64,000 nucleotides of DNA, from NCBI RefSeq assembly GCF_006345805.1, contig NC_042997.1:150598001-150662000 (forward strand). The letters run 5' to 3'. Position numbers and translations under genes: made by a program. The stretch is from Octopus sinensis. Its lineage: Eukaryota. The notes beneath the pieces are model-generated. The model was not told the DNA's origin. It saw only the letters and a list, made by a program, of their open reading frames with translations, and ran no database searches. This document shows positions 5,535-27,058 of the stretch, in pieces. How positions within the stretch are numbered: position 1 is the first letter of the stretch; every line of letters starts with the position of its first letter.

Positions 5535-5579
<45 letters not shown>

Positions 5580-6680: not shown

Positions 6681-8833
6681 TTTGTTATGGTTAAAAGCTA
6701 TGGTTGAAAATAATTGAAAATAGATTTTTTACCCAATGCACAGGTGCCTCGGGAAAAAACTAAGTTGACAAAACCGAGATAGGCTGTTGACAAATGTCTT
6801 CCTAAAATTTGAGCGACATGCGTGCGAATTTGTGGACGTGCATAAATTACAATCACGTACACACAGACACGCGCACACACATCCTCCCTTTTATAGATAT
6901 GATATATATATGTGGGTATGTATGTATGTATGTATGTATGTATGTATGTATGTATGTATGTATGTATGTATGTATGTATGTATGTATGCATGCATGTATG
7001 TATCTATGTATGTATGTTATACTTCGTACATGCTCTTTTTCTTCCTTATGAATTATTTCAGCGTCTCAAGACTTACCTTCAGCCTTAACAGGGTAAGTGT
7101 GGTGCTGCAAGAACTGCTTTGATGCCAGAGGCCCTTACTTTGAAGAAGGGTTTCGAACCTCTCTGAATATAATAAATATCTGTCTTGAAAAGTCTCTAAA
7201 AAGTCTGGAAAGCACATGTTTTATTTTCCGTTTCTTCCCCGAGTACTCTCTGCTAATTTCCACTCTATTTTTCTTTCTTTCCCCAATATATATCTTGTTT
7301 CGTATTATATACTCACTCTGGCTTTATACGTTTTGATATTTCCAATATTCTATGAGTATGTACGAATATTAAACTTTGTGTTTCTTGGAACAAAATTCGT
7401 CTACTCTATTTTTTGTTATTTTATTTTTTCTTCTTATCAATACAATATATTTGTACCTACAAAACATAAATTTTATATGCACCCACACAGGCACACACAC
7501 GCGCACCCGCGCAGGAACACATATATGTTTCTATATATATCCATCTTTGTATGCATATTTTATGATTATATATATGTATATATATAATTTGCAGTATAAA
7601 TTTCTGCTCACAGACAATGACGTTATCTCCGTCTTTTTCACTCGTTTTATCATTATCAGTCTTTCTAACAATCTCATACATACAGACACATAAATTACTA
7701 TGAAATAAACAAATAGATGAGGAGAGCAATGCTAGGCGCGGGTAAGTGTGTAGGAGAGTTTGTATGTATTATATGTATATATATATATATATATATACAT
7801 ATATATAAACAAATGTGTGTATATATTTGTATATATATATATATGGTTACATATGCATATGCGTATGTTTCCCTTTCTCTTTCTCTGTCCTCAATTTCCT
7901 GTCTTTTTGTCCTATTTTACACACTTCATCGATCTCACACTCTCTAAATCATATCGTTCCTATTTTTCCTGTTTTCATAATTTTACTTTCTCATTTTTTC
8001 ATTGTATATTCATTTTCATTTTTGTATCTCTCTTACCATTTCCCAAGCTTTGCTTTCATTTCTCTCCTCCTCAATCTATATATTCCCTTTTTCGTTCTTT
8101 CTTTCACCGCCTCTCTTTATTGTTGCATTCCGTTTCAGTATTTTAATTACTTATCCTCTTTCCATCTTATTTGCTCCTTACCCTTAATACTTCAGCCTGT
8201 TTTCTTTCTGTCTACTTTTCTTTTAACGTCTCGTTCGTTATTGTCACTAAGTAACTTATTTCAAATTCTATTGCAATTCTAATTCTCTTTATTCTTCTTG
8301 TCTATTTTAGTTCCATTGTTCCTGATCTCTTTTCATTCCAAAAAAATAAGAAGATGGTGAAGGTAATGTATCATAATCATACAAGAATGCAAATAAAAAC
8401 CCAAACTCGTCTTTACGTTGCGTGCAACTGATACATAAATGCGAATAAAATGATACGATATTCATGTCGACTACAACGGACTCGGGTGAAATTAAACTGC
8501 GCACCGATAACTTGCTTCCTGATAGTTATGTAACATCGAACGATGATCTTGATATCTTTTTGCCGATGTGTTTATAGTGTTTCTTTCATAAAAAAGAAAT
8601 GACCTGAATGGCTCGGTGACTGAAGTACCAGGACAAACATCCGTCCTACATCATGGTGAAAAATACTTTCCAATGTGAACCCAGTATATTTCCATTGCAC
8701 ACAAGCAGTATACCGAGACGTTGTTTATCTCGCTTCCAGCGGTAGATTTGTAAGGAGGATGTGATTAGTTGCATCTAATGCTAATTTCAAACACACCAGC
8801 TGATTACAGGCCAACCAATCAATATAATGAACC

Positions 8834-9420
8834 ACGGCAAGCTGGCAGAAACGTTAGCACGCGGGGTGAAATGCTTAGCGGTATTTCATCCGCCGTTACG
8901 TTCTGAGTTCAAATTCTTCCGAGGTCGTCTTTGCCTTTCATCCTTTCGGGGTCGATAAATTAAGGACCAGTTACGCACTGGGGCTTATGTAATCGAATTA
9001 ATCCGTTTGTCTGTCTTTGTCCTCTTTGTGTTTAGCCCTCTTGTGGGTAGTAAAGAAATAGGTATTTCGTCTGCAGCTACGTTGTGAGTTAAGTTCCGCC
9101 GAGGTCAACTTTGCCTTTCATCATTTCGGTGTTGATTAATTAAGTACCAGTTACGCACTGGGGTCGATATAATCGACTTAATCCGTTTGTCTGTCCTTGT
9201 ATATCTCCTCTTTGTGTAGCCCTTTGTGTGCAGTAAAGAAATAGGTATTTCGTCTACCGTTACATTCTGTGTTGAAATTCAGACGAGGTCGACTTTGCTT
9301 AACATCCTTTCGGGGTCGATTAAAGAAGTGCCAGTTACGCACTGGAGTCGATGTAATCGACTTAATCCCTTTGTATTTCTTGTCCCCTCTGTTTAGCCCC
9401 CTGTGGGCAATAAAGAAATA
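8834..9420 (+). mobile_element. SINE family A: one tRNA-like head plus three head-to-tail units of about 180 bp
   Basis: Units start with GGTATTTC at 8880, 9061 and 9244 and end TAAAGAAATA. Core GTCGACTTTGCCTTTCATCCTTTCGGGGTCGATAAATTAAGTACCAG resembles the Nin/Deu-type conserved SINE domain (inference). Confidence 0.9.
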
Positions 9421-9916
9421 AAAAGGAGATATAATGAATCACTGTCTCCTCACTACACGCTAAATTAGTATTTGAATAATTTCTGATACCACAGATATCT
9501 TCTCCTTTGTAGACCTAATGCTGCTTCTGTTGAAGGAACGAATGACTTGGTTTGGTGTCGAAAAGAAACCTATGTCGAAAATACAGCAAATTAAACCAAA
9601 GCAAAAAAATAAAAATAAAAATAAAGAAAGGATAACTTCGTCATGGAAGGTGTGTTTTTAGATTCGTTAAGTTAATGATACTTTGCAGTATAGCCACTGT
9701 CACTGCGTTACGGATTGATGTGAAAAAGGGCAATGCTTGAGATTTGGTATATGTTTTGTCATTGGCTACGGCGAATATAGACTATTAAGGATAAGAGTTT
9801 TAAAAAGATGGATTTGGAATTATAGAATTGGCTGCCAAATCGATTCGGTAACGGGACTTTCTAATGAAACCCAGAATAAACAATATAGTCAAATATGTGT
9901 TTGTATATCACTAATT

Positions 9917-11359: not shown

Positions 11360-11905
11360 TAGGTATACGCGTGGTATTATGTTTCCGTTTGCATTAAGAC
11401 TTTCCCAGAAGAAAAGTGTATTGAATATGCTTCATACCAGAATATTTTCCCTTTTATTAAACGGTCTTGAAGGTAGTTTTAATGAGATTTGAATTATTAA
11501 TTCTGAAACCTTTACCGTAATATCATTTGTACGGTGCACCTGGGCGCTGCAAGGTCGATGTCACAGTAGCCACTTAGGTGTGTGGTGGAATTGCATATAT
11601 ATTACACACACACATACACACACACACATGTGTAAATATGTTCGTTTAAGCGGCATACATAAGCATGCACGATGTGTTGTCTCCCTTGTCTGTGTGTGCG
11701 TGTAACATGTTTCTTCGAATATATATCAATATTCGGATCTGCATTTCTCTGCCATATCTCTACAGTAACTGAGTATCTCAATTTCTTCATAGGAATTTTC
11801 TGCACACTTGCCACGGAACATAATAATATCTTGTTTTATTATGACATAGGAATAATTTTAAATGCAGTTAAAAGTGATTGCCGTTATTATATACATGTGT
11901 GTGTA

Positions 11906-12605
11906 AGGCGGCGAGCTGGCAGAAACGTTAGCACGCCGGGAGAAATGCTTAGCAGTATTTTGTCTGCCGTTACGTTCTGAGTTCAAAATCCGTCGAGGTC
12001 GACTTTGCCTTTCATCCTTTCGGGGTCGATAAATTAAGTACCAGTTACGAACTGGGGTCGATTTAATCGATTTAACCTCTTTGTCTATCCTTGTTTGTTC
12101 TCTCTGTGTTTAGCCCCTTGTGGATAGTAAAAAATAGGTATTTCCTCTGCCGCTACGTTCTGAGTTCAAATTCCGCCGAGGTCGAATTGCCTTTTATCCT
12201 TTCGGGGTCAATAAATTGAGTACCAGTTACACACTTGGGTCGATGTAATCGACTTAATCACTTTGTTCTTGTTTGTCCCCTCTATGTTTAGCAATAAAGA
12301 AATAACAAACTTTAGCACGCCGGGGGAAATGTTTAGCGGTATTTCGTCTGCCGAGGTCGACTTTGCTTTCATCATTCGGGATCGATAAATTAAGTACCAG
12401 TTACGCACTGGAGTCGATATAATCGACTTAATCCGTTTGCCTGTCCTAGTTTGTCTCCCCTCTGTTTAGCCCTTTGTGTGTAATAAAGAAATAGGTATTT
12501 CATCTGTCTTTAAGTACTGAGTTCAAATTCTACAGAGGTTGACTTTGCCTTTCATTCTTTCAGGGTAGATAAATTAATTACCAATTGCGTACTCTCATCG
12601 ATCTA
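11906..12605 (+). mobile_element. SINE family A tandem array (four units; the last is diverged and lacks the young tail)
   Basis: Head AGGCGGCGAGCTGGCAGAAACGTTAGCACGCC at 11906; junctions AAATA|GGTATTTC near 12137 and 12494, and GAAATA|ACAAACTTTAGCACGCC near 12305. Confidence 0.9.
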
Positions 12606-12630
12606 ATTGTGTCAAAAGTATATACCTGTG

Positions 12631-12673
<43 letters not shown>

Positions 12674-13003: not shown

Positions 13004-13549
13004 ATAACTTAGTTTTATTTAATTTATATAAAAAATATATATATATCTTTCTATCTATCTATCTATGCACACATAGTAAAACTTCTTAACTCTTTTTTTA
13101 CTTACAACAAATTTGTTATCAGTATTGTTGTAGCAAGTCCTATTCTCTTTAGTTCATTTAATACTTTAATATTTCCACTAAAGGGGATTACTTTTCTTGT
13201 GTCTATTAGTTGCATGAATAACATCAGTAAATCAAATATGTTCAAATCTCATTATCAAGGTATCGAATCGGTTTCGATGATGTGTATTCGATCTTTTAAA
13301 ATAGCTGTTCGTTCAAGTAGTTATTCCACTGATACGAGTACCCTTAATATTTTTCGCAAGACTAGACCTTTCAATTACAGTTACAATCCTTTCGATGTGT
13401 TTTCTCACAATTTCTATCACCCCAGTTTTACTCAAATCGATCCGATGTTTAGATAAAACATAATCGTCTTAGATATTTAAGCTGAACAATACCATTGCGA
13501 AGCGAACTTCTTGACATTTGGTTCATAATGTGTCCGTCATCAACTGTAT

Positions 13550-14165
13550 TATTTTGTAATCTAGGCACAAGGCAAGGATTTTCGGGTGGTGATGGGTGCA
13601 GGTGATTAGATCGACCTCAGTATGTAACTGGTAATTAATTTATCGACTCCGAAAGAATGAAAGGCAAAGTCGACCTCGGCGGATTTTGAACTCATAACAT
13701 AAAACAGATGAAATACCACTACGCATTTCTCCCGACGTACTAACGTTTCTTATTTCTTTATTGCCTACAAGGGGCTAAACACAGAGGGACAAACAAGGAC
13801 AGACAAAGGGATTAAGTCTATTACATCGAGCCAAGTGCGTAACTGGTACTTAATTTATTGACCCCGAAATTATGAAAGGCAAAGTCGATCTCGGCGGAAT
13901 TTGAATTCAGAACGTAGCGGCAGACGGAATACCTAATTCTTTATTACCCACAAGGGGCTAAACACAGACAGGACAAACAAGGACAGACAAACGGATTAAG
14001 TAGATTATATGGACCCCAGTGCGTAACTGGTACTTTTTCATTGACCCAGAAATGATGAAAGGCAAAATCGACCTCGGCGGAATTTGAATTCAGAACGTAG
14101 CGGCACACGAAATACTGCTAAGCATTTCGCCAGGCGTGCTAACGTTTCTACCAGCTCGCCGCCTT
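13550..14165 (-). mobile_element. SINE family A tandem array (three units; the terminal unit has a different, older tail)
   Basis: Minus-strand junctions GAATTA|GGTATTCC and GAAATA|AGAAACGTTAG; the last unit ends ...CCTTGCCTTGTGCCTAGATTACAAAATAAT. Confidence 0.9.
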
Positions 14166-14623
14166 CCAAACGTCATTGCATTGTATATTGTACTGCGAGT
14201 AAAATAAGATACAGAAAAACAGTGTCGAAGCGCATCAGACCAATTAATGCTATTATTTAAAATGCCAAACGTGTTACACAATGTCATGTTGAACCTGTGC
14301 TTACATTAGTTATAATAAGGCTACGTATCTCAGTGGAATGTGGAGTCGCATGACTGACTCAAATGTTAAAATCTTGAACTCATGACCGAAAGAGTGTGGT
14401 TCTGTTTCATGAACAGAGCAGCGAGTTGGGTTCTTAATCAAAGAACCTTCATTTCACGTTGTCCCATTCTATTCAGCTGGTAAAGCTAGCCCCTTCCAGC
14501 AGTTGGGGAAGTATATAAGCCAATGAAACGAGGAAACCGGCTTTATGAGCCTATATGGCTTGGAAAGAAGTTTTATTCTTTTTTTATTTATCTTAGAGGA
14601 ATATTCAGCCATTTACAATTTAG

Positions 14624-15008
14624 TCTTTTACTCTTTTACTTGTTTCAGTCATTTGACTACGGCCATGCTGGAGCACCGCCTTTAATCGAGCAACTCGACC
14701 CCGGGACTTATTCTTTTGTAAGCCCAGTACTTGTTCTATCGGTCTCTTTTGCCGAACCGCTAAGTAACGGGGACGTAAACACACCAACATCGGTTGTCAA
14801 GCAATGCTAAGGGGACAAACACAGACACACAAACGCACACACGTATATATATACATACATATATATACGACGGGCTTCTCTTAGTTTCCGTCTACCAAAT
14901 CCACTCACAAGGCTTTGGTCGGCCCGAGGCTATAGGAGAAGACACTTGCCCAAGGTGCCACGCAGTGGGACTGAACCTGGAACCATGTGGTTGGTAATCA
15001 AGCTACTT
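14624..15008 (-). mobile_element. SINE family B body; its 5' head is displaced to 20453-20484 by the LINE insertion
   Basis: Joining 20484-20453 to 15008-14624 restores the sequence seen uninterrupted at 41968 (GGAGTGGCTGTGTGGTAAGTAGCTTG..ACCAACCACATG.TTCC.GGTTCAGTCCCACTGCGTGGCAC). Confidence 0.92.
14999..15008. other. Left copy of the 10-bp target-site duplication CAAGCTACTT
   Basis: Exact repeat at 20453-20462 on the other side of the LINE. Confidence 0.9.
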
Positions 15009-15236
15009 TATTTCATATAATTTGCCATTTAGGCATTTACAAAGAGGGGACAAACAAGGACAGACAAATATAAAGGGTGAAGTAGCTTAACACAGTTACA
15101 ATTTTCGAATGAAATTACGGATAAGATTATAAACAATGAATTTTACGAAGGCAATGTTTAAAAATATTAATGATCATGTCGAAGGACGGACACCCGGCCA
15201 TCCGGGTAGAACCTTTACTTTCTGATCCGGTCACAC

Positions 15237-17141
15237 TTACCTGGTGCCAAACATACCCATCTTGTATGCCACAGGCTTCCATCTTTTCACAAACATATCT
15301 CGTGACAGACACCTCTTCTCCAGCCTGATTTTGCTACTGAGGTGGTAACTAAAAAAGTTAATCAACCCCTGGCCGGAGACAAAGGTGCCTGTCACTATAC
15401 CTTTCGTACGCGTCTTCCATACTGTTTCTTTCAGTATGGCTACTACACAGAAAAAACAAGCCTTTCTTTCCCTGTTAAGGAAAGGGGGCGGCACAGTCTC
15501 GATGATAGACTCAGCTGATAGCTGTATTCTTCCTATCACTGACAACAGTTGTTCAACAAAAGCTATCAGTCCCGATAACTCCGGACACTCCACGAATGCG
15601 TGCAAGACGGTCTCCCTATCCTGCTCACATCGCGGGCATGTCGGCGAGACGGCACCACCGTGCCTTGACAGCTTGTCGCGAACAGGTAAAGCCGCACGGA
15701 AACACTGCCAGGCCAGGGATTTCTGGTAATTATCCAGATACCCCGGCCCGAACGTCCTCCGGAACAGGTTGACCAACTGATTTTCATCGTAGCCCAGGGT
15801 CTCCCCCAAGGCGTCTTCGGACTTAATTTCCACTAACCCGCTATAGAAATCCGTGGTGGAACTCCTGCTGCCGGCGTTTCCCACCCGAAATAGTAGCTGG
15901 AGCGCCTGACGGCACTCCAAATGCCATTCACTCAGTTTAGGTCTCCGCTTGATCCATGCACCGATGTCCGTTAGGGATGTTAACTGGGGAAGGTAGAACC
16001 GGACGTGCGGCGACCACACCTGCTCTCCATCCAGGTAAAGCCAGAGGTGCCTCAACCTTAACGCGAGTTTTCGCATCCTCAGCCAAGGCATCCCTAGCCC
16101 ACCCTTTAGCGGTTTCTGGCAGCAGACAGAGCGCTTTACAAGTGGCTTTCCTCCTTTCCACAAAAATCGGAAAAGGATTCTCTCCAACTTGTTCAGCCAC
16201 AAATCGGGGCAAGGCACCACGGTCAGACGGTAGGTGATTACTGATGCTATAAACATCTGCACCACCTCCGCCTTCCCTAGCTGGGATAACGCCCGCCCAG
16301 ACCAGGTTTGGGTTAGAGCGGTCACCTTGTTGGCCACCTCACTCCAATTTTTCTCAATCTGGAGGTCTGGCCCGTACCAGACTCCGAGCAGCTTAACAGG
16401 ACCTTCCGTCCAACGCCCTACGACGTTATTGGACGGCATCGGCTTGCCCCTCCAGGTGCCGAGTTGCAAACCGACCGACTTGTCCTTGTTAACCTTTGCT
16501 CCTGCCACCGCCTCGTAGATTTTGATGGCCTCTTCCACCACTGGAAGCTGGCCTTCGTCTGCCACGATGATGGAGGTGTCATCCGCATACGCCGTAGCTC
16601 CTCTTCCACACCATAGATCATGCGGCGCGCCCCCTAGTGCCTCCAACTTCCGCAGCAAAGGCTCAAGAGCCAATACGTATAGGAGCGAGGACAAGGGACA
16701 CCCTTGACGAACTGAACGCTCGATCCTGAACGGCTTCGAAAAGGAACCGTTCACCTTGACTACAGACTCGATGTCGCTATACAAAGCAGCGATCCAACCT
16801 CGAAAGGTCGGGCCTAGGCCAGCCTCTCCGAGGACCGCCGCCAGGTACCGATGGTCGACCCTATCAAATGCTTTGGACTGGTCTAAATGTACCAGTGCTC
16901 CCCCTGCGCCAGAAAGCTTCCCCACCCTCTCTAAGGAGTAGCGTATAAGGTGGAGATTGTCGTGGATCGTTCTGCCGGGGATAGCGCACGTTTGCGCTTC
17001 CCCGACAAGTTTGTCCACGACCCGTGCCAACCTTTTTGCTAGCAGCTTGGCCAGAATCTTTAACTCTGTGTTTAACAGAGTTATGGGCCTGAAGTTCCCT
17101 ATCTCGTCCCACTTGTTCGGGTCCTTCCTGATCAACGTCAC
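15237..17141 (-). CDS. LINE ORF2, reverse transcriptase and C-terminal zinc finger (downstream of a 1-bp frameshift)
   Basis: FRPITLLN, LDQSKAFDRVDH, RQGCPLS, AYADD motifs; CPRCEQDRETVLHAFVEC = CX2CX8HX4C. Confidence 0.95.
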   Translation of the reverse strand: MTLIRKDPNKWDEIGNFRPITLLNTELKILAKLLAKRLARVVDKLVGEAQTCAIPGRTIHDNLHLIRYSLERVGKLSGAGGALVHLDQSKAFDRVDHRYLAAVLGEAGLGPTFRGWIAALYSDIESVVKVNGSFSKPFRIERSVRQGCPLSSLLYVLALEPLLRKLEALGGAPHDLWCGRGATAYADDTSIIVADEGQLPVVEEAIKIYEAVAGAKVNKDKSVGLQLGTWRGKPMPSNNVVGRWTEGPVKLLGVWYGPDLQIEKNWSEVANKVTALTQTWSGRALSQLGKAEVVQMFIASVITYRLTVVPCPDLWLNKLERILFRFLWKGGKPLVKRSVCCQKPLKGGLGMPWLRMRKLALRLRHLWLYLDGEQVWSPHVRFYLPQLTSLTDIGAWIKRRPKLSEWHLECRQALQLLFRVGNAGSRSSTTDFYSGLVEIKSEDALGETLGYDENQLVNLFRRTFGPGYLDNYQKSLAWQCFRAALPVRDKLSRHGGAVSPTCPRCEQDRETVLHAFVECPELSGLIAFVEQLLSVIGRIQLSAESIIETVPPPFLNRERKACFFCVVAILKETVWKTRTKGIVTGTFVSGQGLINFFSYHLSSKIRLEKRCLSRDMFVKRWKPVAYKMGMFGTR

Positions 17142-18637
17142 CGCCCCCGGCTCGCAGACTTGGGAATTCTCCCATTCTGCTGCCAGTTGGTGTAGACGCT
17201 AGCCAGCAGGTGCCCGAACAAGTCTGGCATACTTCTATAAAATTCATAGGGCAGACCATCGAGACCCGGCGACTTCTCCCCGGGGCACTTGCCCAACACC
17301 TCGATTACTTCCTCGGCTGTGATTGGCCCTTCACAGCACTCAGCCTCTCGTGTCGAGAGGCGCAGGCCACCAGACAGGAGGTCCCTAAGGGCCTGACCAT
17401 GATCCAGCGTCCCGCACCTCCCGAACAACTCGGCGAAGTGCTTGTGAAGTGCCTCACACATCTCGTCCCGGTTCTTGATCGTGCATCCGTTTTCATCAAC
17501 AAGAGACCCAATTGTGGCATCGTTTCCACGCTGTGTTTCTATCGTACGGGCCCATCCGGCAACATTAATTCCCTCACGGCCCAATGCTCGTACTTTAGCC
17601 CGGACTCTACATCCCTCATGTTTGGTTTTGAGGTAACGGTCTAATGCCGTTCTCGCCGCTAAAATGTGAGATGCAGAGCCCAACCTCAACGCCTCCTCTA
17701 AGTTCTTAACTAGTTGCCCTTCTATTCTAGCCCTATCTAGTCTTAGTTGTTTACTAAATCTAATGGACTCGAATCGAATGGCTCTTTTGAGGGTGAACCA
17801 CCACCGGTTATTAACCACGGCTCCGGTTAACGCCCTCTGCACTAACACCTTAATCCGGCTACGGTATGTCTCGCGTGTCAAAATAGACTTGTTCAGCTTC
17901 CAGTAGCCGGTTCCTATCTTAAGTGTGCTATCTATGTCCAGTCTACACGTGACCATTCTATGGTCAGTATAGGGCACCTGGACGAGCTGTGGACAACTAA
18001 AACTAGACTTATCTCTAGTTCTTATCACTATCCTGTCTAGATAAGACTTGAACCTTCCGTCGCCACTCATCCAGGTCCACTCTGGGACGTTCGGATGGTC
18101 AAGTCTGTAACGATCTGCTAGCTGAAACCGCTTAAGCAGATCCACGAGACGTGAGTTCACTTTCCTATAGATCGAGCCAACGCTATCGATGTGTACGTCA
18201 ACGATAGCATTAAAGTCCCCTAATATCACTAAAGTCTTCGACGTCACGAGAAAGCCCTCTAGGCGCCGATAAAAATCAGTTTGGAAACCTCTAGCACAAG
18301 GTGCATAGAGTCCGATCAACCTGAAGGCCTTACTGCTGTATGTCACATCAAGGACGACCAGCCCACCTTCTGGGTCTACATACACTGTACTTGTCTGTAG
18401 AGCTAAGTCTTTACGGATCAGTACCACTACGCCCCCTCGCCCTCCGGTCTGGCCAGGAGACATGATTTTCTCGTAGCCATTCAGGAGAGACGAGAAGGTT
18501 TGTAGGCCGTCCAGCTTGGTCTCTGTAGCAACCATCACATGTATATCATGTGATCTGAGGTCGTCGAGGAAACAAGCCTGCTTCCACTTCGAACTCAGAC
18601 CACGCACATTTAAACAACCAAGGTTAAGCGAAGCCAT
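17138..18637 (-). CDS. LINE ORF2, apurinic-like endonuclease and linker
   Basis: LNVRGL, VATETKL, GDFNA, YLDRI, TDH and GxDGLPxEFY motifs; one extra G in the C5 run at 17144-17148 fuses it to the RT frame (SRG-AVTLIRKD). Confidence 0.95.
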   Translation of the reverse strand: MASLNLGCLNVRGLSSKWKQACFLDDLRSHDIHVMVATETKLDGLQTFSSLLNGYEKIMSPGQTGGRGGVVVLIRKDLALQTSTVYVDPEGGLVVLDVTYSSKAFRLIGLYAPCARGFQTDFYRRLEGFLVTSKTLVILGDFNAIVDVHIDSVGSIYRKVNSRLVDLLKRFQLADRYRLDHPNVPEWTWMSGDGRFKSYLDRIVIRTRDKSSFSCPQLVQVPYTDHRMVTCRLDIDSTLKIGTGYWKLNKSILTRETYRSRIKVLVQRALTGAVVNNRWWFTLKRAIRFESIRFSKQLRLDRARIEGQLVKNLEEALRLGSASHILAARTALDRYLKTKHEGCRVRAKVRALGREGINVAGWARTIETQRGNDATIGSLVDENGCTIKNRDEMCEALHKHFAELFGRCGTLDHGQALRDLLSGGLRLSTREAECCEGPITAEEVIEVLGKCPGEKSPGLDGLPYEFYRSMPDLFGHLLASVYTNWQQNGRIPKSASRGR

Positions 18638-18654
18638 TACAAAAAGTAAAAGTT

Positions 18655-18966
18655 CTACTTACATTTCGTTGGAGAGGTGGGGGCCGACCTCACCACACGT
18701 TTGTGGGCCCCTTCTTTCTCCTCTTTCTTCAGATAGTCCGGCAAGTTCGCGATATGCCGGATGGCGTTTGGGTGTCTGTCTTTTAATTGTTTGAACGTTG
18801 TTTCCGCAATCCACGCGTGTCTATTTCGATCTTTGTATTTGTTGTACAGTCTTGCTGACTGATGCTTAACCACAATATCGTTTATGTATTTGTCTTGTGT
18901 GTCGAATTCAATTAATATGAGTTCATTTTCTTTTTTGTCTTCTTTTTCTGGGCCAGTTGAGCGGGA
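18655..18966 (-). CDS. Probable C-terminal extension of LINE ORF1 in the -1 frame
   Basis: Open frame of about 103 codons (PEKEDKKENELILIEFDTQDKYINDIVVKHQSARL...PTKCK) overlapping the ORF1 end; a later in-frame TAA overlaps the ORF2 ATG (TAATG, 18639-18635). Confidence 0.6.
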   Translation of the reverse strand, partial: SRSTGPEKEDKKENELILIEFDTQDKYINDIVVKHQSARLYNKYKDRNRHAWIAETTFKQLKDRHPNAIRHIANLPDYLKKEEKEGAHKRVVRSAPTSPTKCK

Positions 18967-20081
18967 TTATTTTTCCGTGTCTGTGGTGCGTCTTTGTTTT
19001 TATTATTTTTTGTAGGGGATGTGGACGGGGATGCTGCACGAATTCTTTTACGAACTGGTGCAAATTCCCCCTCTGATACCTCCATGGTATCGTCTGGGGT
19101 AGCAATAGTTTGTTCGGTAGGCGCCGCAGGTTTTAGGGGGGTGGGAAGTTTTAATAGTGTAGGGGTTTGTGAGTGCGAGGGCTGGGTTTTTTCTTCAGTC
19201 TGTTTTGGGGTTGGCACCGTAACAGCAGGAGTGGGATTTTTTGTTTTTGTAGGGGTAGATGTGTTTGCAAGGGTAGGGAGTTTTTTATTATCTGAGGGGC
19301 CTGGTGTCTGCGGTTTCTTTTGCTTGTCTGGACAGTCTACACGAATGTGGCCCTTTTTGCCGCAGGCGTAACAGGTGGGTTTTCGGCCTTCGACCTGTAC
19401 CCTGAGGGCTACGTTCTCGCCCACGAGCACCCTCTCAGGAAGGAGCTGCAGGTCCTCCGCTGTTCCTTGAATTAATATATTAATGTTACGCCCGAGCCAA
19501 AATCGAGTGGTAGAGCATGTTACTTGAAGTATTTTTATTTTGTCCGCCCTTTTATATAACAGGGCGGCCACTACCTCTACCGGATCTACTTCCGGCGGGG
19601 CTTCTACAATCCTGACCCGGGACGTCCTGCGTCCCCTATAGCTTGGAAAAAGTACCACCTCCTTGGTTTTTAGGGGGTTCACAGAATGCCCGCGGGCCAT
19701 TTCTTCCCCCGAGAAGCGGACATCCACGGTGCCATATGTCTGTCCCCTGGCGACGTACACGATGTCCTTCAAAATCGGGGACAGGCATTTCTCGATGGTG
19801 CTTTTTTCGAAGTGTTTGAACCTTCTGCTTTGTGGACAGAAAGTTTTAAACACTACGGTCCGCTTCTCGGTCTCCACGATACTGGCGGAGGGTGATATTT
19901 TAACATCACCACCCTCCTCTTGCATTCTTTTAAATAGCTCGACGAGCTGATTGACATCGATGTCAATGTTCTCGGTAGCCACTGCGGCTACCGCAGAAAA
20001 TTTTTTAACATTGCTCTCCTCAAGAGCACTACTTTCGTGAATAATTTCAACAGGCATTATTCTGTTGAAATTAGACAACAC
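18912..20081 (-). CDS. LINE ORF1, gag-like nucleic-acid-binding protein
   Basis: 389 aa with zinc knuckle CYACGKKGHIRVDC (CX2CX4HX4C) followed by a P/T/K-rich linker. Confidence 0.92.
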   Translation of the reverse strand: MLSNFNRIMPVEIIHESSALEESNVKKFSAVAAVATENIDIDVNQLVELFKRMQEEGGDVKISPSASIVETEKRTVVFKTFCPQSRRFKHFEKSTIEKCLSPILKDIVYVARGQTYGTVDVRFSGEEMARGHSVNPLKTKEVVLFPSYRGRRTSRVRIVEAPPEVDPVEVVAALLYKRADKIKILQVTCSTTRFWLGRNINILIQGTAEDLQLLPERVLVGENVALRVQVEGRKPTCYACGKKGHIRVDCPDKQKKPQTPGPSDNKKLPTLANTSTPTKTKNPTPAVTVPTPKQTEEKTQPSHSQTPTLLKLPTPLKPAAPTEQTIATPDDTMEVSEGEFAPVRKRIRAASPSTSPTKNNKNKDAPQTRKNNPAQLAQKKKTKKKMNSY

Positions 20082-20452
20082 AAAAATTACGAATGTTGGT
20101 TTCCCACAAAACTGGGAAACCTATAGAAAGTTTTTCTTCCAAAGTAGTTCAAAAAAGCAGTTCAAAAATTCCAATTCCCACCCCCATTCGGGGGAGGGGC
20201 ACGAAAATAGTCTGGCAGGACTATATATAGTCACGTAAATAAAAAGCCACAGTGGCTAACAGTTCAACGGTAAGAAATTATTCAATTATTTCCCGGTAAA
20301 ACCGGAGGACAAGACAGTTCAGCAACGTTTAAAGGCAAATTTTCAGTAGCAGGAATTCAACAATTAACAACACAGCAAAACTCTTACCGGGAAGAAAACG
20401 CGTCCAAACCGTAGTACGGTAAGCAATGTCACTCTTCTCTCAGTGAGGTTAG

Positions 20453-20484
20453 CAAGCTACTTACCACACAGCCACTCCTGCCCC
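20453..20484 (-). mobile_element. SINE family B 5' head (A-box region) including the right TSD copy (20453-20462)
   Basis: Minus strand GGGGCAGGAGTGGCTGTGTGGTAAGTAGCTTG. Confidence 0.85.
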
Positions 20485-20919: not shown

Positions 20920-22010
20920 AAGCAAGGACGTGGCAAGTAGGTAAACTCAGTCGCATGCTTGACAAAATGCATAACGGCTATTCTTCCAGTTTTAAAAGGT
21001 GAGTTCAAGTAGTACCAAAGCCACAGTTACTTTTCATTCTTTCAGAGCCGATAAAATAAAGTACCAGTTAAATATTGGGTCGATGTAATCAAAGTGCTCC
21101 CTATCCTAAAAATCGTTGCCCTTGTGCGAAAATTAGAATTATTAAAGCGAGGAAAGGGAGGGAGATTACTGAAAGGTTACCACGTATGACGAAACGCTAA
21201 GAGGCATTTGTTACAGCTCTTAACGTTTTGAATTGAAATACTGCCGAGATCAGATGCACTTTACATTCTCTCGGGGTCGATGAAAAAAGATACCTATCAA
21301 ACAGTAGGGTTGATGTAATCTATTAGACTTCTCCCCGACAAAAGTTAGCCTTGTTCCAAAATTCGGAAAACAGGTGGCGAACTAACATAATCGTTAACGC
21401 TTCGTATAAATTGTTTAAGACATTTCTGATAGCATTTCGATTATGATTTCATATTCTAACGAGGTTAAACGTTCCTTTACATTCTTTCGGATTCGATATG
21501 TTAAAGTACTTATGAAGTATTTGTCTCAATGTAATCAACTGACAATCCTTACCATAAAATCGATGGACTTTTGACAACAATTATTTAAAAGAGAGATCGT
21601 CTAAAAGTTATAATATAAATAACATAATAAGAATATTATTACTATTTCTAAATTCTGTCGGTACTCAACTTTGCCTTTCATTTTGCCAAGGTGGATGAAA
21701 TAAGTACCAGTGGAACACTGGAGTCGATTTAGTCGACTTAGTCCTCTCACCCAAACTTGTTGGCTGTGTACCAAAGTTTAAAACGAGTTGTATTACTATA
21801 TTTTAGGCGGCGTGTTGATAGAGTCGATAGCACGCCGGGCAAAATATTTAGCGGCATTTCGTCCATCCCTACGTTCTGATTTCAGATTCAGCCGGGGTCG
21901 ACATTGATTTCCATCTTCCCGGTGTTCGATATAATAAGACCTACATAAATGCTGGGGTCGATGTAACCGACTTTCACTCTCCTTCGAAATTGCTGGCTTT
22001 GTGTCAAACT
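20920..22010 (+). mobile_element. Cluster of old, diverged SINE family A copies
   Basis: Repeated degenerate CTTT.CATT/CCT..GGGGTCGAT..AATAAGTACCAG...GGGTCGATGTAATC blocks near 21030, 21270, 21480, 21670 and 21910. Confidence 0.7.
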
Positions 22011-22529
22011 TGAAACCAATAATGTTGTTATTTCTCTTTTCTGTTTGTTTTTTCAGTCTATCTCTCCACCACTCTGCTCTTAATAACTTTCTCGCTACTC
22101 CCCTGAAGCTTTTATTATTTGACCCATATATTTATATAATTCCACTGCTTAAATTTCACGCTACAATTAACTCTGCAACTCCTCTGTATATCAAGCACTA
22201 TTCCTAAGTTTTTATCTTCGTCACATCTTACTATCTTACTTCTATGTAGCTTAAGAGTTCTATTCGGAATCTCACAGTCCTTACTTCGAATTTACTCTAA
22301 ATAATTTGGGTCAATGTAATTTTAACTATTCTTCCTTTGATCTAAGTATTGTAAATGGAATTTGTTGTGTCTTGGGGGATGCATTACACTAATAATAATT
22401 AGACATTCTCAGTTCAATCCCATTCTTTTTTTTACTATTACCCAATTTGTTAAATAACTAACCAACTAATCGTTCGTTTCTTTAATGCAGTGATTAAACA
22501 ATCACACGTTTGTTTGTTAGTCAAATATC

Positions 22530-23460
22530 TTTCATCGCCATTCTCGGCCTCCTCAGTGACTTACCTTCTCGCTCTCAGAGGCCAGTGAAAGAGTGGATTT
22601 TGCTGAATAGTCACTCTTTTCAACATCTCTCATCTAGAATATGATAAACTTTTTTGGTCTCAAATCTCTTGAAGTTACTCAGACCTTAACTTCAGTCTCA
22701 GGATAAGCCATATATTGTGATATATTCCTTCACTTAGCAATCAGCTCTGGATGTGTTGTAAACACTTCATCGACCTTACAATTTTTACTCTTATAACATT
22801 AAAACATTTCATAAAACTGAATTATCCACGCTATCTATTTGTTCTTTTTTCTATTACACTCCACAAAATGGAAAACCCTTTCAATTCATATCACCTGTTA
22901 CAGCTGTATTGTTTCCAGACAGTTAGTTGAGGCCTATGATGGAGAACCATGTCACGAATTTGTTTGTCATTTCTTGCAGAGTGGCATCTTTCACAGCATG
23001 GTTCCAATTTTAGTATTTATTTATAAAACTCATTCACATTTTATTGTCTCTTGATAAAATTCATTCCTCTATTGTCTCTCCTATCAACATTTTCAAATTA
23101 ATATCTTTCCTATTTTTCAAAAATGCATTATTTTATTTTGTTAATATTTGTTTGCTGCACAAGCATTTGTTGGTTTTATTGTTGTTTAAATTATCTCACA
23201 CTAACTCTCTCTTTCTTTATTATTTCCCTCCTTCATTATTTGTGAGTGTGTGAGTATTTCTATATTTGATATTTGTTTTTAATTATACTAATGGAACTGT
23301 CTGGATATTTTGTTATTTTTACAGTCTATATCTTCATTATCGATCTGGAAACTTTATCATATAACTAACTACTAAATGTTTCGTCAGCATTTCTGTCTTT
23401 TACCAAAATATATTCCCTCTTAGGTCCAAGCTTGCTGACGTGTTTTATATATTTATTTTC
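22530..23460 (-). pseudogene. Decayed coding-like segment, possibly a sacsin-like C-terminus (pre-DnaJ/HEPN region)
   Basis: Minus frames with scattered stops: KLGPKREYILVKDRNADETF; FYK*ILKLEPCCERCHSARNDKQ (compare recalled sacsin HEPN NFSAARND); QYMAYPETEV. Recall-based similarity only. Confidence 0.3.
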
Positions 23461-24222
23461 CTAGCGTTAAGATTTGAACAAATATTCTTTAAATAACCAA
23501 TATAAATGTAAATCATGAAAATGTTTAAGACTCCAAGGAATCAATATACAACCAAACAATTACGACTATTCTTTCTAACACAGTTTCCATGTTGAGTTAC
23601 GGTATTGTAGACATTGCCTCTTTGGCACAGTAACACGGAAATGAAAATTGGCTTATTCAAAAGTATACTTTGGCACTTATGCTAAGGAGTTTTGCGTACC
23701 CTTACGGCATAAGCCATGATTAACTCATAGCCTAATAATTCACTACTTCAAATATCACTAAGTTTGTCATGATAATTAATTTCAAGTTACAATATTATAT
23801 GTATTAAACATACATAATTCGATGTACGGATGTTTTTAGGATAATAGTTCGAAGTTGATCGAGTAGAGCTTTACGTACAACATATCTTACGGGATTCTAT
23901 ATAGTTTCTGCCGAAGCTAACTCACGCACAAGTCCTGGATCGATCAGAGTCTTTTAGTTCATTTGCTTAAAATACCACGCAGCGAATCCGAATGCATGAT
24001 GCCATGGTCACTAAGAGAAACTGTTAAACATTCCCATATGCATGTATATGTATAGGAAGAGTGATATAGATAGGCAGATAGACAGACAGAGAGACAGACA
24101 GACATATAGATAGATAGATAGATAGATAGACAGACCGACAGACACACAGACACACAGAAAGATAGATTGATTGATAGATAAAGTGAGAGAGGTAGGTAAA
24201 AAGAACGATAGCGAGAGAGAGG

Positions 24223-24260
<38 letters not shown>

Positions 24261-24610
24261 GATGGGTAAATGTACATACATTTGTTCACTCCGTTTTAGT
24301 TTCGACATCGTATAATGCGTTGCCTCCATTTTTGCTCCTAACTTTCGATGTTCTTGTAGCATCGCCAGAGGAAATATGGTGAACATGTAGCGATGCAAAA
24401 TGACACCACTGCTGATGGGATGATTTTAACACTCAGTATTAAATTAATTGAAGAAAGCCGCATCTACCTCTGCATTAGCATTATTGGCAAAATATTTAGT
24501 TATCACATTAAATGATGAAGGTGATGGCCGAAAATGACTGACTGTGAATAGATATTGCTCTTGTTTTTTTTTTCTGCAAATAAATATAATATATATATAT
24601 ATATATATAT

Positions 24611-26303
24611 AATAGAAATATGTTACAAAAAGTAAATAGAAACTGCAAGTGGAAATGTAAGGGGTAAGTAAGAAGAAAAATAAGTGTAAATGCACATTCG
24701 AAATCAAAAACTAAAGGACGTTGTAAGAAAAAAAACGATAGACATATACAATTAGATGAACTGAGATATGAATAAAAGTAATAAAAGTCATTATTGTGAG
24801 GTATTAAAGAGTTTTATAAGCACACCGGTTTCGTAGAATTACTAATCATTGCTTTGAATGTACACCGATTATTGAACGGTGTCAGGTCTACTAGTCCCTG
24901 AGTAAAACGATTATCAGTAAGGGAGGTAAGTAGCTCTGGATTTGGTGCAATTAGGGTAGATATAGATCTGTTATGTGAATAGTTTATGGGATGTATGGGG
25001 GTTAGTCTTATTAATTGAAAGGTTAGTGTAGTGTTCTGTATTATGTTGTGTTCATATCGAGTTGTGGAAGATATTTATTGATGAAAGTTGCATCTTTATT
25101 CATTCTTTGTCTTACTGTATATATAAAGTGTGAGAGAGCGAGAGAGATACATGCATATATATATATATATATAATATATATATATAATAGAAATATGTTA
25201 CAAAAAGTAAATAGAAACTGCAAGTGGAAATGTAAGGGGTAAGTAAGAAGAAAAATAAGTGTAAATGCACATTCGAAATCAAAAACTAAAGGACGTTGTA
25301 AGAAAAAAAACGATAGACATATACAATTAGATGAACTGAGATATGAATAAAAGTAATAAAAGTCATTATTGTGAGGTATTAAAGAGTTTTATAAGCACAC
25401 CGGTTTCGTAGAATTACTAATCATTGCTTTGAATGTACACCGATTATTGAACGGTGTCAGGTCTACTAGTCCCTGAGTAAAACGATTATCAGTAAGGGAG
25501 GTAAGTAGCTCTGGATTTGGTGCAATTAGGGTAGATATAGATCTGTTATGTGAATAGTTTATGGGATGTATGGGGGTTAGTCTTATTAATTGAAAGGTTA
25601 GTGTAGTGTTCTGTATTATGTTGTGTTCATATCGAGTTGTGGAAGATATTTATTGATGAAAGTTGCATCTTTATTCATTCTTTGTCTTACTGTATATATA
25701 AAGTGTGAGAGAGCGAGAGAGATACATGCATATATATATATATATATAATATATATATATATAATAGAAATATGTTACAAAAAGTAAATAGAAACTGCAA
25801 GTGGAAATGTAAGGGGTAAGTAAGAAGAAAAATAAGTGTAAATGCACATTCGAAATCAAAAACTAAAGGACGTTGTAAGAAAAAAAACGATAGACATATA
25901 CAATTAGATGAACTGAGATATGAATAAAAGTAATAAAAGTCATTATTGTGAGGTATTAAAGAGTTTTATAAGCACACCGGTTTCGTAGAATTACTAATCA
26001 TTGCTTTGAATGTACACCGATTATTGAACGGTGTCAGGTCTACTAGTCCCTGAGTAAAACGATTATCAGTAAGGGAGGTAAGTAGCTCTGGATTTGGTGC
26101 AATTAGGGTAGATATAGATCTGTTATGTGAATAGTTTATGGGATGTATGGGGGTTAGTCTTATTAATTGAAAGGTTAGTGTAGTGTTCTGTATTATGTTG
26201 TGTTCATATCGAGTTGTGGAAGATATTTATTGATGAAAGTTGCATCTTTATTCATTCTTTGTCTTACTGTATATATAAAGTGTGAGAGAGCGAGAGAGAT
26301 ACA

Positions 26304-26306
<3 letters not shown>
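24611..26306. repeat. Triple tandem duplication of an approximately 575-bp unit
   Basis: AATAGAAATATGTTAC starts at 24611, 25186 and 25763; copies appear identical outside the (TA)n junctions. Confidence 0.97.
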
Positions 26307-26348
<42 letters not shown>

Positions 26349-26824: not shown

Positions 26825-26862
<38 letters not shown>

Positions 26863-26869
26863 CGTTTCT

Positions 26870-27058
26870 ACAATAGGCACAAGACTTGAAATTTGGTGGC
26901 AGGGGACTAGTGTTTCGGCCCTGGTGTTTCACTGGTGCTTTATTTATCAACCGCGAGAGTATGAAAGGCAAAGACGACCTCGGCTGAATTTTCACTCAGA
27001 ACGTAAAGACGGACGAAGAACAACATGCCAACGATTCTGTCAACTCACCGCCTTAACA
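26870..27058 (-). mobile_element. Diverged SINE family A copy with the old-type tail (a similar copy lies at about 31250-31425)
   Basis: + strand TATGAAAGGCAAAGACGACCTCGGC..ACTCAGAACGTAAAGACGGACGAA...CACCGCCTTA. Confidence 0.75.

What the first reader, a model, noticed from the sequence alone, without database searches (positions are those of the whole stretch)
13550..15068. The Tx1 LINE 3' end is shared with SINE family A: a candidate autonomous partner lies next to its SINEs
Seen: the LINE ends (minus) TTTGTCTGTCCTTGTTTGTCCCCTCT-ttgtaaa-TGCC-taaat-GGCA-aattatat-GAAATA. Young family-A SINE units end TTTGTCTGTCCTTGTTTGTCCCTCT-gtgttta-GCCC-cttgt-GGGC-aataaa-GAAATA. The block at 15043-15068 matches 13783-13807 at 25/26 nt, both carry a 4-bp stem with a 5-nt loop of different sequence, and both end in GAAATA. 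Established: many SINEs take their 3' tail from the LINE that mobilises them (stringent 3' recognition). Inference: this Tx1-clade element mobilises the young family-A SINEs, which have swapped an older tail (still seen at 13550-13600 and 26870) for this one. L1/Tx1-type partners with a stringent tail are unusual.
Basis: partly seen in the sequence, partly recalled or inferred. Interest (0 to 1): 0.82.

Follow-up and report, generated by a model that had tools for sequence, protein, structure and literature searches.

The report
Octopod LINE and SINE share tail
A nearly intact L1-type jumping gene in this cephalopod-like sequence ends in the same kind of short structured tail as a neighbouring family of small parasitic repeats, which is the usual sign that the small repeats borrow the big element's copying machinery; the pairing holds for the wider LINE group, but this particular copy is probably not the present-day driver.

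Summary
The minus-strand LINE (15009-20446) ends exactly as quoted. Its 26-nt block is identical to the consensus of the window's SINE-A units and 25/26 to the unit at 13783-13807, where shuffles give 0 matches.

A 16-bp target-site duplication shows the LINE inserted into a CORE-type SINE ("SINE-B"). It also shows that block, hairpin and GAAATA form the true 3' terminus, with no poly(A).

LINE relatives at 56-64% ORF2 identity, including one from Argonauta hians, carry a homologous tail. In Argonauta, SINE-A-like copies match that LINE's last 31 nt at 26-28/31.

The 4-bp hairpin shows compensatory changes (89% of cells paired, against 12-45% in slid controls). So SINE-A took its tail from this octopod L1-superfamily LINE group.

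The window pair is a mosaic, however. SINE-A matches this LINE in the block (20-25/26) but not in the last 31 nt (13-14/31). There it resembles other LINE lineages (18-25/31).

The SINE copies are 7-11% diverged, while the LINE has a single frameshift. The donor was probably an ancestral or sister lineage.

Same-family LINE copies could not be obtained. This is a new member of a known kind, of moderate interest.

The parts
15009..20446 (-). Full-length non-LTR retrotransposon (L1 superfamily, Tx1-like), 5,438 bp, no poly(A)
   Evidence: The ends are defined by a 16-bp TSD inside a split SINE-B. The best PDB matches are human L1 ORF2p.
18912..20081 (-). ORF1 (389 aa as listed from a GTG; an ATG lies at 20056) with a CCHC zinc knuckle
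   Evidence: PF00098 E=1.9e-5.
17138..18637 (-). ORF2 N-terminal part: APE-type endonuclease plus linker
   Evidence: PF03372 E=2e-12. It aligns to human L1 ORF2p residues 10-508, E=3e-24.
15237..17141 (-). ORF2 C-terminal part: RT plus zf-RVT. It is separated from the endonuclease part by a single frameshift at about 17147-17156.
   Evidence: PF00078 and PF13966. tblastn of P0001 switches frame once.
15009..15236 (-). LINE 3' UTR (228 nt)
   Evidence: The stop codon is at 15237-15239. The UTR has no other copy in the window.
15043..15068 (-). 26-nt block TTTGTCTGTCCTTGTTTGTCCCCTCT shared with SINE-A tails
   Evidence: 20-25/26 to seven of the eight SINE-A units (10/26 to the degraded A1u3) and 26/26 to their consensus.
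15023..15035 (-). LINE terminal hairpin TGCC-taaat-GGCA
   Evidence: Predicted in the minimum-free-energy and centroid folds. It aligns positionally with the GCCC/GGCC-cttgt-GGGC/GGCC/GGCT hairpins, with compensatory changes.
15009..15014 (-). Terminal GAAATA, directly abutting the TSD
20447..20462 (-). Upstream TSD copy AAGTAGCTTGCTAACC, inside the SINE-B head that starts at about 20484
14993..15008 (-). Downstream TSD copy AAGTAGCTTGATTACC. The rest of the host SINE-B continues to about 14624.
13548..14165 (-). SINE-A array 3. Unit 1 spans about 13937-14165 and unit 2 spans 13751-13936, both with the Y tail. Unit 3 spans about 13548-13750 with the older tail. An imperfect TSD-like repeat lies at 14171-14184 and 13535-13547.
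13751..13807 (-). Y-type tail of unit 2: block 13783-13807, hairpin GCCC-cttgt-AGGC 13763-13775, GAAATA 13751-13756
13937..13991 (-). Y-type tail of unit 1 (block with 1 mismatch; GCCC-cttgt-GGGT)
8836..9428 (+). SINE-A array 1: three Y-tail units, flanked as a whole by the TSD ATATAATGAA[C/T]CAC at 8822-8835 and 9429-9442
11906..12618 (+). SINE-A array 2: four units, the last of the older subfamily, flanked by the TSD TATATAC[A/C]TGTGT[G/C]TGTA at 11888-11905 and 12619-12636
26858..27052 (-). Older-tail SINE-A copy ending ...gtcttgtgcctattgtagaaacga followed by (TTA)n

Best explanation
**What it is.** The last ~60 nt of the 'Y-tail' SINE-A units are a LINE-derived tail module. It consists of a pyrimidine-rich block, a 4-bp hairpin with a 5-nt loop, and AAUAAAGAAAUA. 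It was taken from the octopod L1-superfamily (Tx1-like) LINE lineage to which the element at 15009-20446 belongs.

**How it most likely works (inferred).** The LINE's ORF2 protein recognises this structured, non-poly(A) 3' end on its own RNA. This is 'stringent' recognition. It starts target-primed reverse transcription at the terminal GAAAUA. SINE-A transcripts carrying the same module are copied in trans.

**Where the window copy fits.** It is a nearly intact, full-length insertion. It keeps the block exactly, but its terminal 31 nt, including hairpin stem and loop, have diverged from the SINE's. It is therefore best read as a descendant or sister of the donor lineage. It may even be a recombinant carrying another lineage's terminus. 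It is probably not the element that mobilised the SINE-A copies seen here.

**Shown:** the shared sequence, the true terminus, tail homologues in related LINEs, LINE-SINE tail identity within Argonauta, and hairpin covariation.

**Inferred:** the direction of transfer, recognition by ORF2p, and which lineage was the donor.
For: 1. The block match far exceeds chance.
2. The TSD inside the split SINE-B places block, hairpin and GAAATA at the exact 3' end of the retrotransposed LINE, with no poly(A).
3. LINE relatives with 56-64% ORF2 identity end in the same architecture. L003 ends ...CTGTCCTTGCCTTTTGT..GGCC-cttgt-GGCC-AATAAAAGAAATC. Argonauta L002 ends ..GGCC-cttgt-GGCT-AATAAAGAAATC. L030 ends ..cttgtGGCCAAT.
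4. The SINE-A consensus aligns to the ends of L002 and L003 over 55-61 nt, with scores of 24.5 and 19.5 against null maxima of 17 and 17.5.
5. Three SINE-A-like copies in the Argonauta locus, and a fourth element that shares only this tail, end in ..GGCCcttgtGGCTaatagagaaatcTAT. They match the Argonauta LINE at 26-28/31. Lineage-specific tail states thus co-vary between LINE and SINE.
6. Across 14 tails, 89% of hairpin cells are paired, against 12-45% when the partner is slid. Two of the four pairs show double-sided changes, and 0/500 shuffles reach the covariation score.
7. ORF2 is collinear with human L1 ORF2p across endonuclease, linker and RT. Stringent L1-clade LINE/SINE pairs with covarying 3' hairpins are established in plants and a green alga (PMC3472496, PMC3747384).
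Against: - The window LINE matches the window's SINE-A at only 13-14/31 in the hairpin and terminus. No SINE in the window carries its terminal 30 nt.
- Outside the block, its 3' UTR does not align significantly with the UTRs of L002 or L003. Vertical inheritance of the block therefore rests on collinearity rather than on a significant alignment.
- Thermodynamic support for the hairpin is weak, with z-scores from -1.5 to +1.1.
- The covariation comes from few independent events.
- No second copy of this LINE family could be obtained. Fixation of the block in the family is untested.
- The SINE copies (7-11% diverged) are older than this LINE copy.
Confidence: 0.68

Rival explanations
1. One reading: this very LINE family, with its present tail, is the active autonomous partner that mobilises the Y-tail SINE-A units. 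Recognition would rest on the shared block, on a hairpin of any sequence, and on the terminal GAAAUA.
For: - The block is identical to the SINE-A consensus, whereas other LINE lineages match it at only 7-13/26.
- Hairpin geometry (4-bp stem, 5-nt loop) and the terminal GAAATA are preserved, with compensatory stem changes.
- The LINE is nearly intact.
- In other stringent LINEs the stem sequence is free to vary (PMC3472496).
Against: - The loop, conserved as CTTGT/YTTGT in all other LINE and SINE tails, is TAAAT here.
- The spacer to the terminus is 2 nt longer.
- The last 31 nt match at 13-14/31.
- The SINE-A copies in the window are clearly older than the LINE copy.
- SINE-A-like elements with the CTTGT tail predate the split from Argonauta.
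Confidence: 0.22
2. Reverse direction or recombination: the LINE lineage acquired the 26-nt block from a SINE-A RNA, or from another LINE, by template switching. The block would then say nothing about who mobilises whom.
For: - The pattern is a mosaic: a perfect block next to a strongly diverged terminus.
- The rest of the UTR is not significantly alignable to relatives.
- Template switching by L1-type reverse transcriptases is established (discussed in PMC4494074).
Against: - Reverse transcription starts at the 3' end. A switch from SINE RNA to LINE RNA would therefore transfer the SINE's terminus, not an internal block while leaving a LINE-specific terminus.
- No SINE-A body sequence lies upstream of the block in the LINE.
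- Relatives carry a diverged homologue of the block at the same position relative to the hairpin.
- An Argonauta element (L002 8232-8300) has the long block followed by the ancestral hairpin. It aligns over 64 nt to the SINE-A consensus and over 50 nt to this LINE.
Confidence: 0.09
3. Chance or low-complexity resemblance between T/G/C-rich stretches, with no evolutionary link.
For: A similar motif, TTTGTGTGTCTGTGTTTGTCCC, sits inside SINE-B at 14812-14833 next to TG/TA microsatellite sequence.
Against: - Shuffles give 0 expected matches.
- The alignment score is 28 against a null maximum of 15.5.
- Position, spacing and terminus all match.
- The pattern is replicated in Argonauta.
Confidence: 0.01

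Closest known systems
Stringent-type SINE/LINE pairs with a common 3' tail (eel UnaSINE1/UnaL2, tortoise Pol III SINE/CR1, tobacco TS; the Okada-Ohshima model; PMC3747384)
   Same: The SINE's 3' region is homologous to the 3' end of a LINE in the same genome. Both end at the same terminal motif without needing poly(A). A small stem-loop sits near the end and shows compensatory changes.
   Different: The LINE here belongs to the L1 superfamily, not to L2, CR1 or RTE. The match in the window is a mosaic: exact block, diverged terminus. No functional test exists.
Stringent L1-clade pairs: maize/sorghum LINE1-1_ZM-type with their SINEs, and Chlamydomonas L1-1_CR with SINEX-3_CR (Ohshima 2012, PMC3472496)
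   Same: An L1-clade LINE with a conserved 3' end that forms a covarying hairpin and is shared with SINEs.
   Different: Those elements come from plants and an alga, and they end in poly(A). This one is from an animal (octopod) and ends in GAAATA or GAAATC with no A-run.
Tx1-Mar LINEs and SINEU in crocodilians (Kojima 2015, PMC4494074)
   Same: A Tx1-clade LINE inferred to mobilise a SINE family in trans.
   Different: That partnership was inferred from shared target preference and shared 5' heads, not from a shared 3' tail. Here no shared target preference could be shown.
Octopus tRNA-derived SINEs OK/OR1/OR2 (Ohshima and Okada 1994) and the L1-Tx1 families annotated as recently active in Octopus vulgaris (PMC13282606)
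   Same: The same kinds of elements in the same animal group. SINE-B here carries the CORE-like motif CCTTGGGCAAGTG; that this is a CORE-like motif is my own recognition and was not tested. L1-Tx1 is listed among active octopus LINEs.
   Different: I could not obtain those consensus sequences, so identity of SINE-A or SINE-B with the named families is untested. The papers I could search do not discuss a SINE-LINE tail pairing in octopus.

Membership tests
SINE/LINE pair with common 3' tail (stringent type) | The SINE 3' region is homologous to the 3' end of the LINE's UTR | tested here: met
   The block is 26/26 to the SINE-A consensus, and 29/30 in a local alignment. The full 55-64-nt tail aligns to related LINEs. 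In the window pair itself, the last 31 nt match at only 13-14/31.
SINE/LINE pair with common 3' tail (stringent type) | Both elements end at the same terminal motif at the TSD boundary | tested here: met
   The LINE ends GAAATA directly against its TSD. SINE-A units end GAAATA. In Argonauta both LINE and SINE end GAAATCTAT.
SINE/LINE pair with common 3' tail (stringent type) | A conserved 3' stem-loop supported by compensatory changes | tested here: met
   89% of cells are paired, against 12-45% in slid controls. Two of four pairs have double changes, and 0/500 shuffles reach the score. The caveats are that the stem is only 4 bp, the independent events are few, and the folding z-scores are not significant.
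SINE/LINE pair with common 3' tail (stringent type) | Overlapping periods of activity in the same genome | tested here: inconclusive
   The SINE-A units are 7-11% from a local consensus. The LINE copy has one frameshift and no stop codons. There is only one LINE copy and eight SINE units, and no genome-wide data.
SINE/LINE pair with common 3' tail (stringent type) | Retrotransposition depends on the tail | not testable with these tools
   This needs a retrotransposition reporter assay.
L1 superfamily non-LTR retrotransposon | ORF2 with an N-terminal APE endonuclease, an RT and a C-terminal Cys-rich domain, plus a separate ORF1 | tested here: met
   Pfam gives PF03372, PF00078 and PF13966, and ORF1 has PF00098. 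ORF2 is collinear with human L1 ORF2p residues 10-508 and 524-891, with E values of 3e-24 and 2e-32. R2 proteins score far worse.
Tx1 clade | The RT falls inside the Tx1 clade in a phylogeny with reference elements | not tested
The label is plausible, because L1-Tx1 families are reported in octopus (PMC13282606), but it is unverified.
Tx1 clade | Target-sequence-specific insertion | tested here: inconclusive
   The window copy sits in a SINE-B. L003 abuts (ATT)n. L002 sits in AT-rich unique sequence. Three sites are too few, and no common target is evident.
tRNA-derived SINE (for SINE-A) | A tRNA-related head with Pol III A and B boxes | tested here: inconclusive
   ARAGORN and Rfam find nothing. 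A B-box-like GAGTTCAAATTCC is visible by eye in the consensus.
tRNA-derived SINE (for SINE-A) | Short, non-coding, dispersed, and flanked by TSDs | tested here: met
   TSDs of 14 and 18 bp flank arrays 1 and 2. Several dispersed copies are present.

The most novel reading that the evidence does not exclude
An animal L1/Tx1-type LINE lineage uses stringent, hairpin-dependent 3'-end recognition that has been conserved across octopods. The window copy would then record 'tail escape': the LINE has kept the upstream block but replaced its terminal hairpin and loop, with compensatory stem changes. This would shed a SINE parasite that had copied the ancestral tail. SINE-A in turn has changed tails at least once, between LINE sublineages: the older tail resembles the 3' ends of the L031/L032/L033-type LINEs.
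Probability: 0.2. Interest if true: 0.68.

Novelty: new member of a known kind. Interest (0 to 1): 0.45.

Why it matters
SINEs make up about a tenth of octopus genomes (11.6% in O. vulgaris, PMC13282606). In the papers I could search, most of them are unclassified and no LINE partner is discussed.

Tying one abundant SINE family to an L1/Tx1-like LINE group would have several uses:
- It would explain how that SINE family spread.
- It would add an animal example to the few L1-clade LINEs that read a specific 3' structure rather than poly(A). That bears on whether stringent recognition is ancestral in the L1 group.
- It would provide a defined ~60-nt RNA element (block, hairpin, GAAAUA) for retrotransposition assays.

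The mosaic between LINE and SINE tails also offers a concrete case for studying how LINE tails and their SINE parasites co-evolve.

Tried and rejected
1. **Other copies of this LINE family.**
   - The self-search of the window found none.
   - The protein search found nothing closer than 64% identity.
   - Exact-protein look-up of the window's endonuclease ORF found nothing.
   - The search for related loci on metagenomes found no relative.
   - 19-mer scans of metagenome, GTDB and IMG/VR contigs returned only chance 19-23-nt matches.
2. **L001 and L004.** These contigs end before the LINE terminus and were not informative.
3. **Thermodynamic folding of the tails.** It gave no significant z-scores. 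I relied on covariation instead.
4. **Rfam and ARAGORN.** Both found nothing in the window.
5. **Literature.** No paper holds the tail or core sequences as text. The SINEBase and Ohshima 2012 supplements are not held. SINE-A and SINE-B could not be matched to named families.
6. **Further homology upstream of the block.** I thought the LINE-SINE homology might extend about 20 nt upstream (TAAGCTACTTCACCC against TAATCGACTTAATCCC). The local aligner did not extend into it, so I do not claim it.
7. **The 11-nt GTTTGTCCCCT inside the block.** I first read it as specific to the window's genome. An Argonauta element (L002 8232-8300) also has the long form, so I dropped that reading.
8. **Local tandem duplication as the origin of the SINE-A arrays.** Units are generally no more alike within an array than between arrays.
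9. **A tandem-repeat scan of 22000-27000**, prompted by the GC-skew peak. It found nothing.
Full report
**1. What is in the window**

The window is AT-rich (about 30-39% GC) apart from a GC-rich island at 15-20 kb.

That island is a minus-strand non-LTR retrotransposon:
- ORF1 lies at 18912-20081 and has a CCHC knuckle.
- ORF2 is split into an APE endonuclease part (17138-18637, PF03372) and an RT part (15237-17141, PF00078 and PF13966).
- tblastn with the closest relative, P0001, shows that the two ORF2 parts are joined by a single frameshift near 17147-17156. ORF2 has no stop codon over about 1,130 codons.
- Both halves of ORF2 find human L1 ORF2p as their best solved relative. They are collinear over endonuclease, linker and RT, with E values of 3e-24 and 2e-32. 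R2 proteins score far worse.

The element therefore belongs to the L1 superfamily. I had no Tx1 reference sequences to test it.

**2. The LINE's exact ends**

Upstream of the LINE, on the minus strand, lies the head of a second SINE family, 'SINE-B'. It reads ...GGCAGGAGTGGCTGTGTGGTAAGTAGCTTGCTAACC and ends at 20447.

Directly after the LINE's ...TATATGAAATA (last base 15009), the same SINE-B resumes with AAGTAGCTTGATTACCAACCACATGG.... Alignment to two intact SINE-B copies in the window (41951-, 43341-) confirms this.

The LINE is thus a full-length 5,438-bp insertion into a SINE-B, with a 16-bp target-site duplication at 20447-20462 and 14993-15008 that carries two differences.

This settles one possible artefact. 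The block, the hairpin and GAAATA are the true 3' terminus of the retrotransposed LINE RNA. They are not a SINE-A fragment lying next to it. There is no poly(A).

**3. The observation**

The quoted strings are correct. The LINE tail, read on the minus strand, is:
- block, 15068-15043
- ttgtaaa
- TGCC, 15035-15032
- taaat
- GGCA, 15026-15023
- aattatat
- GAAATA, 15014-15009

The SINE-A unit at 13751-13807 has the block minus one C (25/26), then gtgttta, GCCC, cttgt, AGGC, aataaa and GAAATA. That is the consensus state, not the state of this copy.

The evidence that the match exceeds chance:
- The 22-mer search gives 7 matches at up to 3 mismatches, all in SINE or LINE tails or in one SINE-B interior. 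Shuffles give 0.00 expected.
- An 8-unit SINE-A consensus has the block 26/26.
- Local alignment to the LINE UTR gives 29/30, score 28 against a null maximum of 15.5.

**4. Related LINEs**

No protein in the 5.8-billion-sequence collection is closer than 64% to this ORF2. The nearest are cephalopod sequences. Three of them gave loci that reach the LINE terminus:
- **L003** (JGI contig, 64% identity) ends ...CTGTCCTTGCCTTTTGTATCGTCCTTAATGTTTCCGGGCCcttgtGGCCAATAAAAGAAATC followed by (ATT)n.
- **L002** (Argonauta hians, 59%) ends ...TTCTGTGTCGGCCcttgtGGCTAATAAAGAAATC.
- **L030** (56%) ends ...CTCTGTCCTcttgtGGCCAATCAA.

The SINE-A consensus aligns to the very ends of L002 and L003 over 55 and 61 nt, above every shuffle. 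The tail architecture of a pyrimidine-rich stretch, a 4-bp hairpin with a YTTGT loop, and AATAAAGAAAT is therefore a property of this LINE group. That makes LINE-to-SINE the parsimonious direction of transfer.

**5. An independent replicate in Argonauta**

The 10-kb Argonauta locus also holds three copies that share SINE-A's core and tail, at 71-74% identity over about 90-150 nt, and a fourth element (L002 8232-8300) that shares only the last 64 nt. All four end ...TCTGTGTT[T/C]GGCCcttgtGGCTAATAGAGAAATCTAT.

Over the hairpin and terminus they match the Argonauta LINE at 26-28/31. Both kinds of element end GAAATCTAT in Argonauta. In the window both end GAAATA.

Lineage-specific tail states that co-vary between LINE and SINE in two genomes are the strongest support I found for a real partnership at the level of the LINE group.

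**6. The hairpin**

ViennaRNA predicts the 4-bp hairpin in most tails, but the energies are no better than shuffles.

Covariation is more telling. On 14 aligned tails (alignment A4), 89% of cells pair, against 12-45% when the 3' arm is slid. Two of the four pairs show double-sided changes:
- The outermost pair is G-C or G-U elsewhere and U-A in the window LINE.
- The second pair is C-G in the window SINE and G-C in the LINEs and in the Argonauta SINEs.

None of 500 shuffles reaches the covariation score (a smaller set is). These probably represent only two or three independent events, so the support is moderate.

**7. Why this LINE is probably not the present driver**

Split into two parts, the tail is a mosaic:

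| Tail part | Window SINE-A units vs this LINE | Window SINE-A units vs other LINEs |
|---|---|---|
| Block (26 nt) | 20-25/26 in seven of eight units; the degraded A1u3 scores 10/26 | 7-13/26 |
| Hairpin and terminus (31 nt) | 13-14/31 | Argonauta LINE 22-25/31; L003 18-21/31 |

Further points in the same direction:
- The loop, conserved as CTTGT or YTTGT everywhere else, is TAAAT here.
- No SINE in the window or in the fetched loci carries this LINE's own terminal sequence.
- The eight Y-tail units are 7-11% from their own consensus, and their array TSDs carry mismatches. The LINE has a single frameshift.
- The Y-type tail also exists in Argonauta SINEs, so it is ancient rather than a recent swap.

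The simplest reading is that the donor was an ancestral or sister lineage combining the window-type block with the ancestral hairpin. An Argonauta element (L002 8232-8300) has exactly that combination. It aligns over 64 nt to the SINE-A consensus and over 50 nt to this LINE's tail. On this reading, the lineage leading to the window copy later changed, or swapped by recombination, its last ~31 nt.

Capture of the block from the SINE is unlikely. Reverse transcription starts at the 3' end, so a template switch would transfer the terminus rather than an internal block.

**8. The older tail**

Seven older SINE-A-like copies end in a different tail with the consensus ...TCCCCTCCCCCAAAATTGCTGGCCTTGTGCCAAAATTAGAAAC.

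Its core motif is the best local match in the 3' regions of three LINEs that are 40-45% identical in ORF2:
- L031 and L032, from one ENA assembly
- L033, from another

In each case the motif lies 630-740 nt after the stop codon. Scores are 16-19.5, with 0/500, 1/300 and 1/300 shuffles reaching them.

This suggests that SINE-A has used the tails of at least two sublineages of the same LINE group. It is a lead rather than a demonstration, because the organisms behind those assemblies are unknown and the ends of those LINEs were not defined.

**9. Comparison with what is known**

SINE/LINE pairs with a common tail, and stringent recognition of it, are textbook for the L2, CR1 and RTE clades (PMC3747384). 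For the L1 clade they are rare but published: maize/sorghum and Chlamydomonas, with a covarying hairpin (PMC3472496). A Tx1-clade LINE mobilising SINEs is published for crocodilians, but that was inferred from shared targets and heads (PMC4494074).

In the papers I could search, no SINE-LINE tail pairing is described for octopus. I therefore rate this as a new member of a known kind.

**10. Verdict**

| Question | Answer |
|---|---|
| Observation | Confirmed |
| SINE-A tail derives from this LINE group and is read by its machinery | About 0.85 for derivation; 0.68 for the full statement as worded |
| This family is the current driver | About 0.2 |
| Interest | 0.45 |

Noticed in passing
window 8836-9428, 11906-12618, ~13548-14165; also L002 8815-9315: SINE-A occurs as head-to-tail arrays of 3-4 units, and each array as a whole is flanked by one TSD. 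Internal units start directly after the previous GAAATA at only two positions of the consensus. Five junctions are at about position 52 (GGTATTTCG) and two are at about position 22 (GAAACGTTAG). In arrays 2 and 3 the last unit belongs to the older subfamily. Units are generally no more alike within an array than between arrays, although A2u2 and A3u2 are 91% identical. Possible origins are template jumping onto processed RNA 5' ends, multimeric master genes, or targeted nested insertion. Two full SINE-A-like units are also tandem in Argonauta.
   Followed up: partly
window 14993-15008 and 20447-20484; 14624-15008: The LINE interrupts a SINE-B copy, with a 16-bp TSD AAGTAGCTTGCTTACC. SINE-B carries a CORE-SINE-like motif (GGCACCTTGGGCAAGTGTCTTC) and may correspond to the octopus OR-type CORE-SINEs. 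That could not be verified.
   Followed up: partly
window 14812-14833 (-): SINE-B contains an internal motif, TTTGTGTGTCTGTGTTTGTCCC, that resembles the LINE/SINE-A block with 3 mismatches in 22. It lies just after a TA/TG microsatellite. It may be coincidental low-complexity sequence or a remnant of a related tail.
   Followed up: no
window 9415-9428; L031 5240-5262; L032 ~5543-5556: Array 1 ends GAAATAAAAAGGAG before its TSD. The distant LINE relatives L031 and L032 carry GGAAATAAAGGAG and GGAAATAAAGGGAG near their presumed 3' ends. This may be a shared terminal motif beyond GAAATA.
   Followed up: no
window 20980-22030 (+): A cluster of five degraded, older-tail SINE-A-like copies lies immediately upstream (in minus-strand terms) of the LINE and its host SINE-B.
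   Followed up: partly
L003 2011-2105; window 26790-26870: A LINE relative and an older-tail SINE-A copy both run into (ATT)n/(TTA)n microsatellites at their 3' ends. The repeat could be a preferred AT-rich target or a product of reverse-transcriptase slippage.
   Followed up: no
L002 6015-6140 and 6425-6560: The first ~125 nt of the Argonauta LINE's 3' UTR are duplicated, with about 280 nt of AT-rich sequence between the two copies.
   Followed up: no
window 24001-26000: A strong positive GC skew (+0.35) appears in one 2-kb bin. No tandem repeat was detected there.
   Followed up: partly
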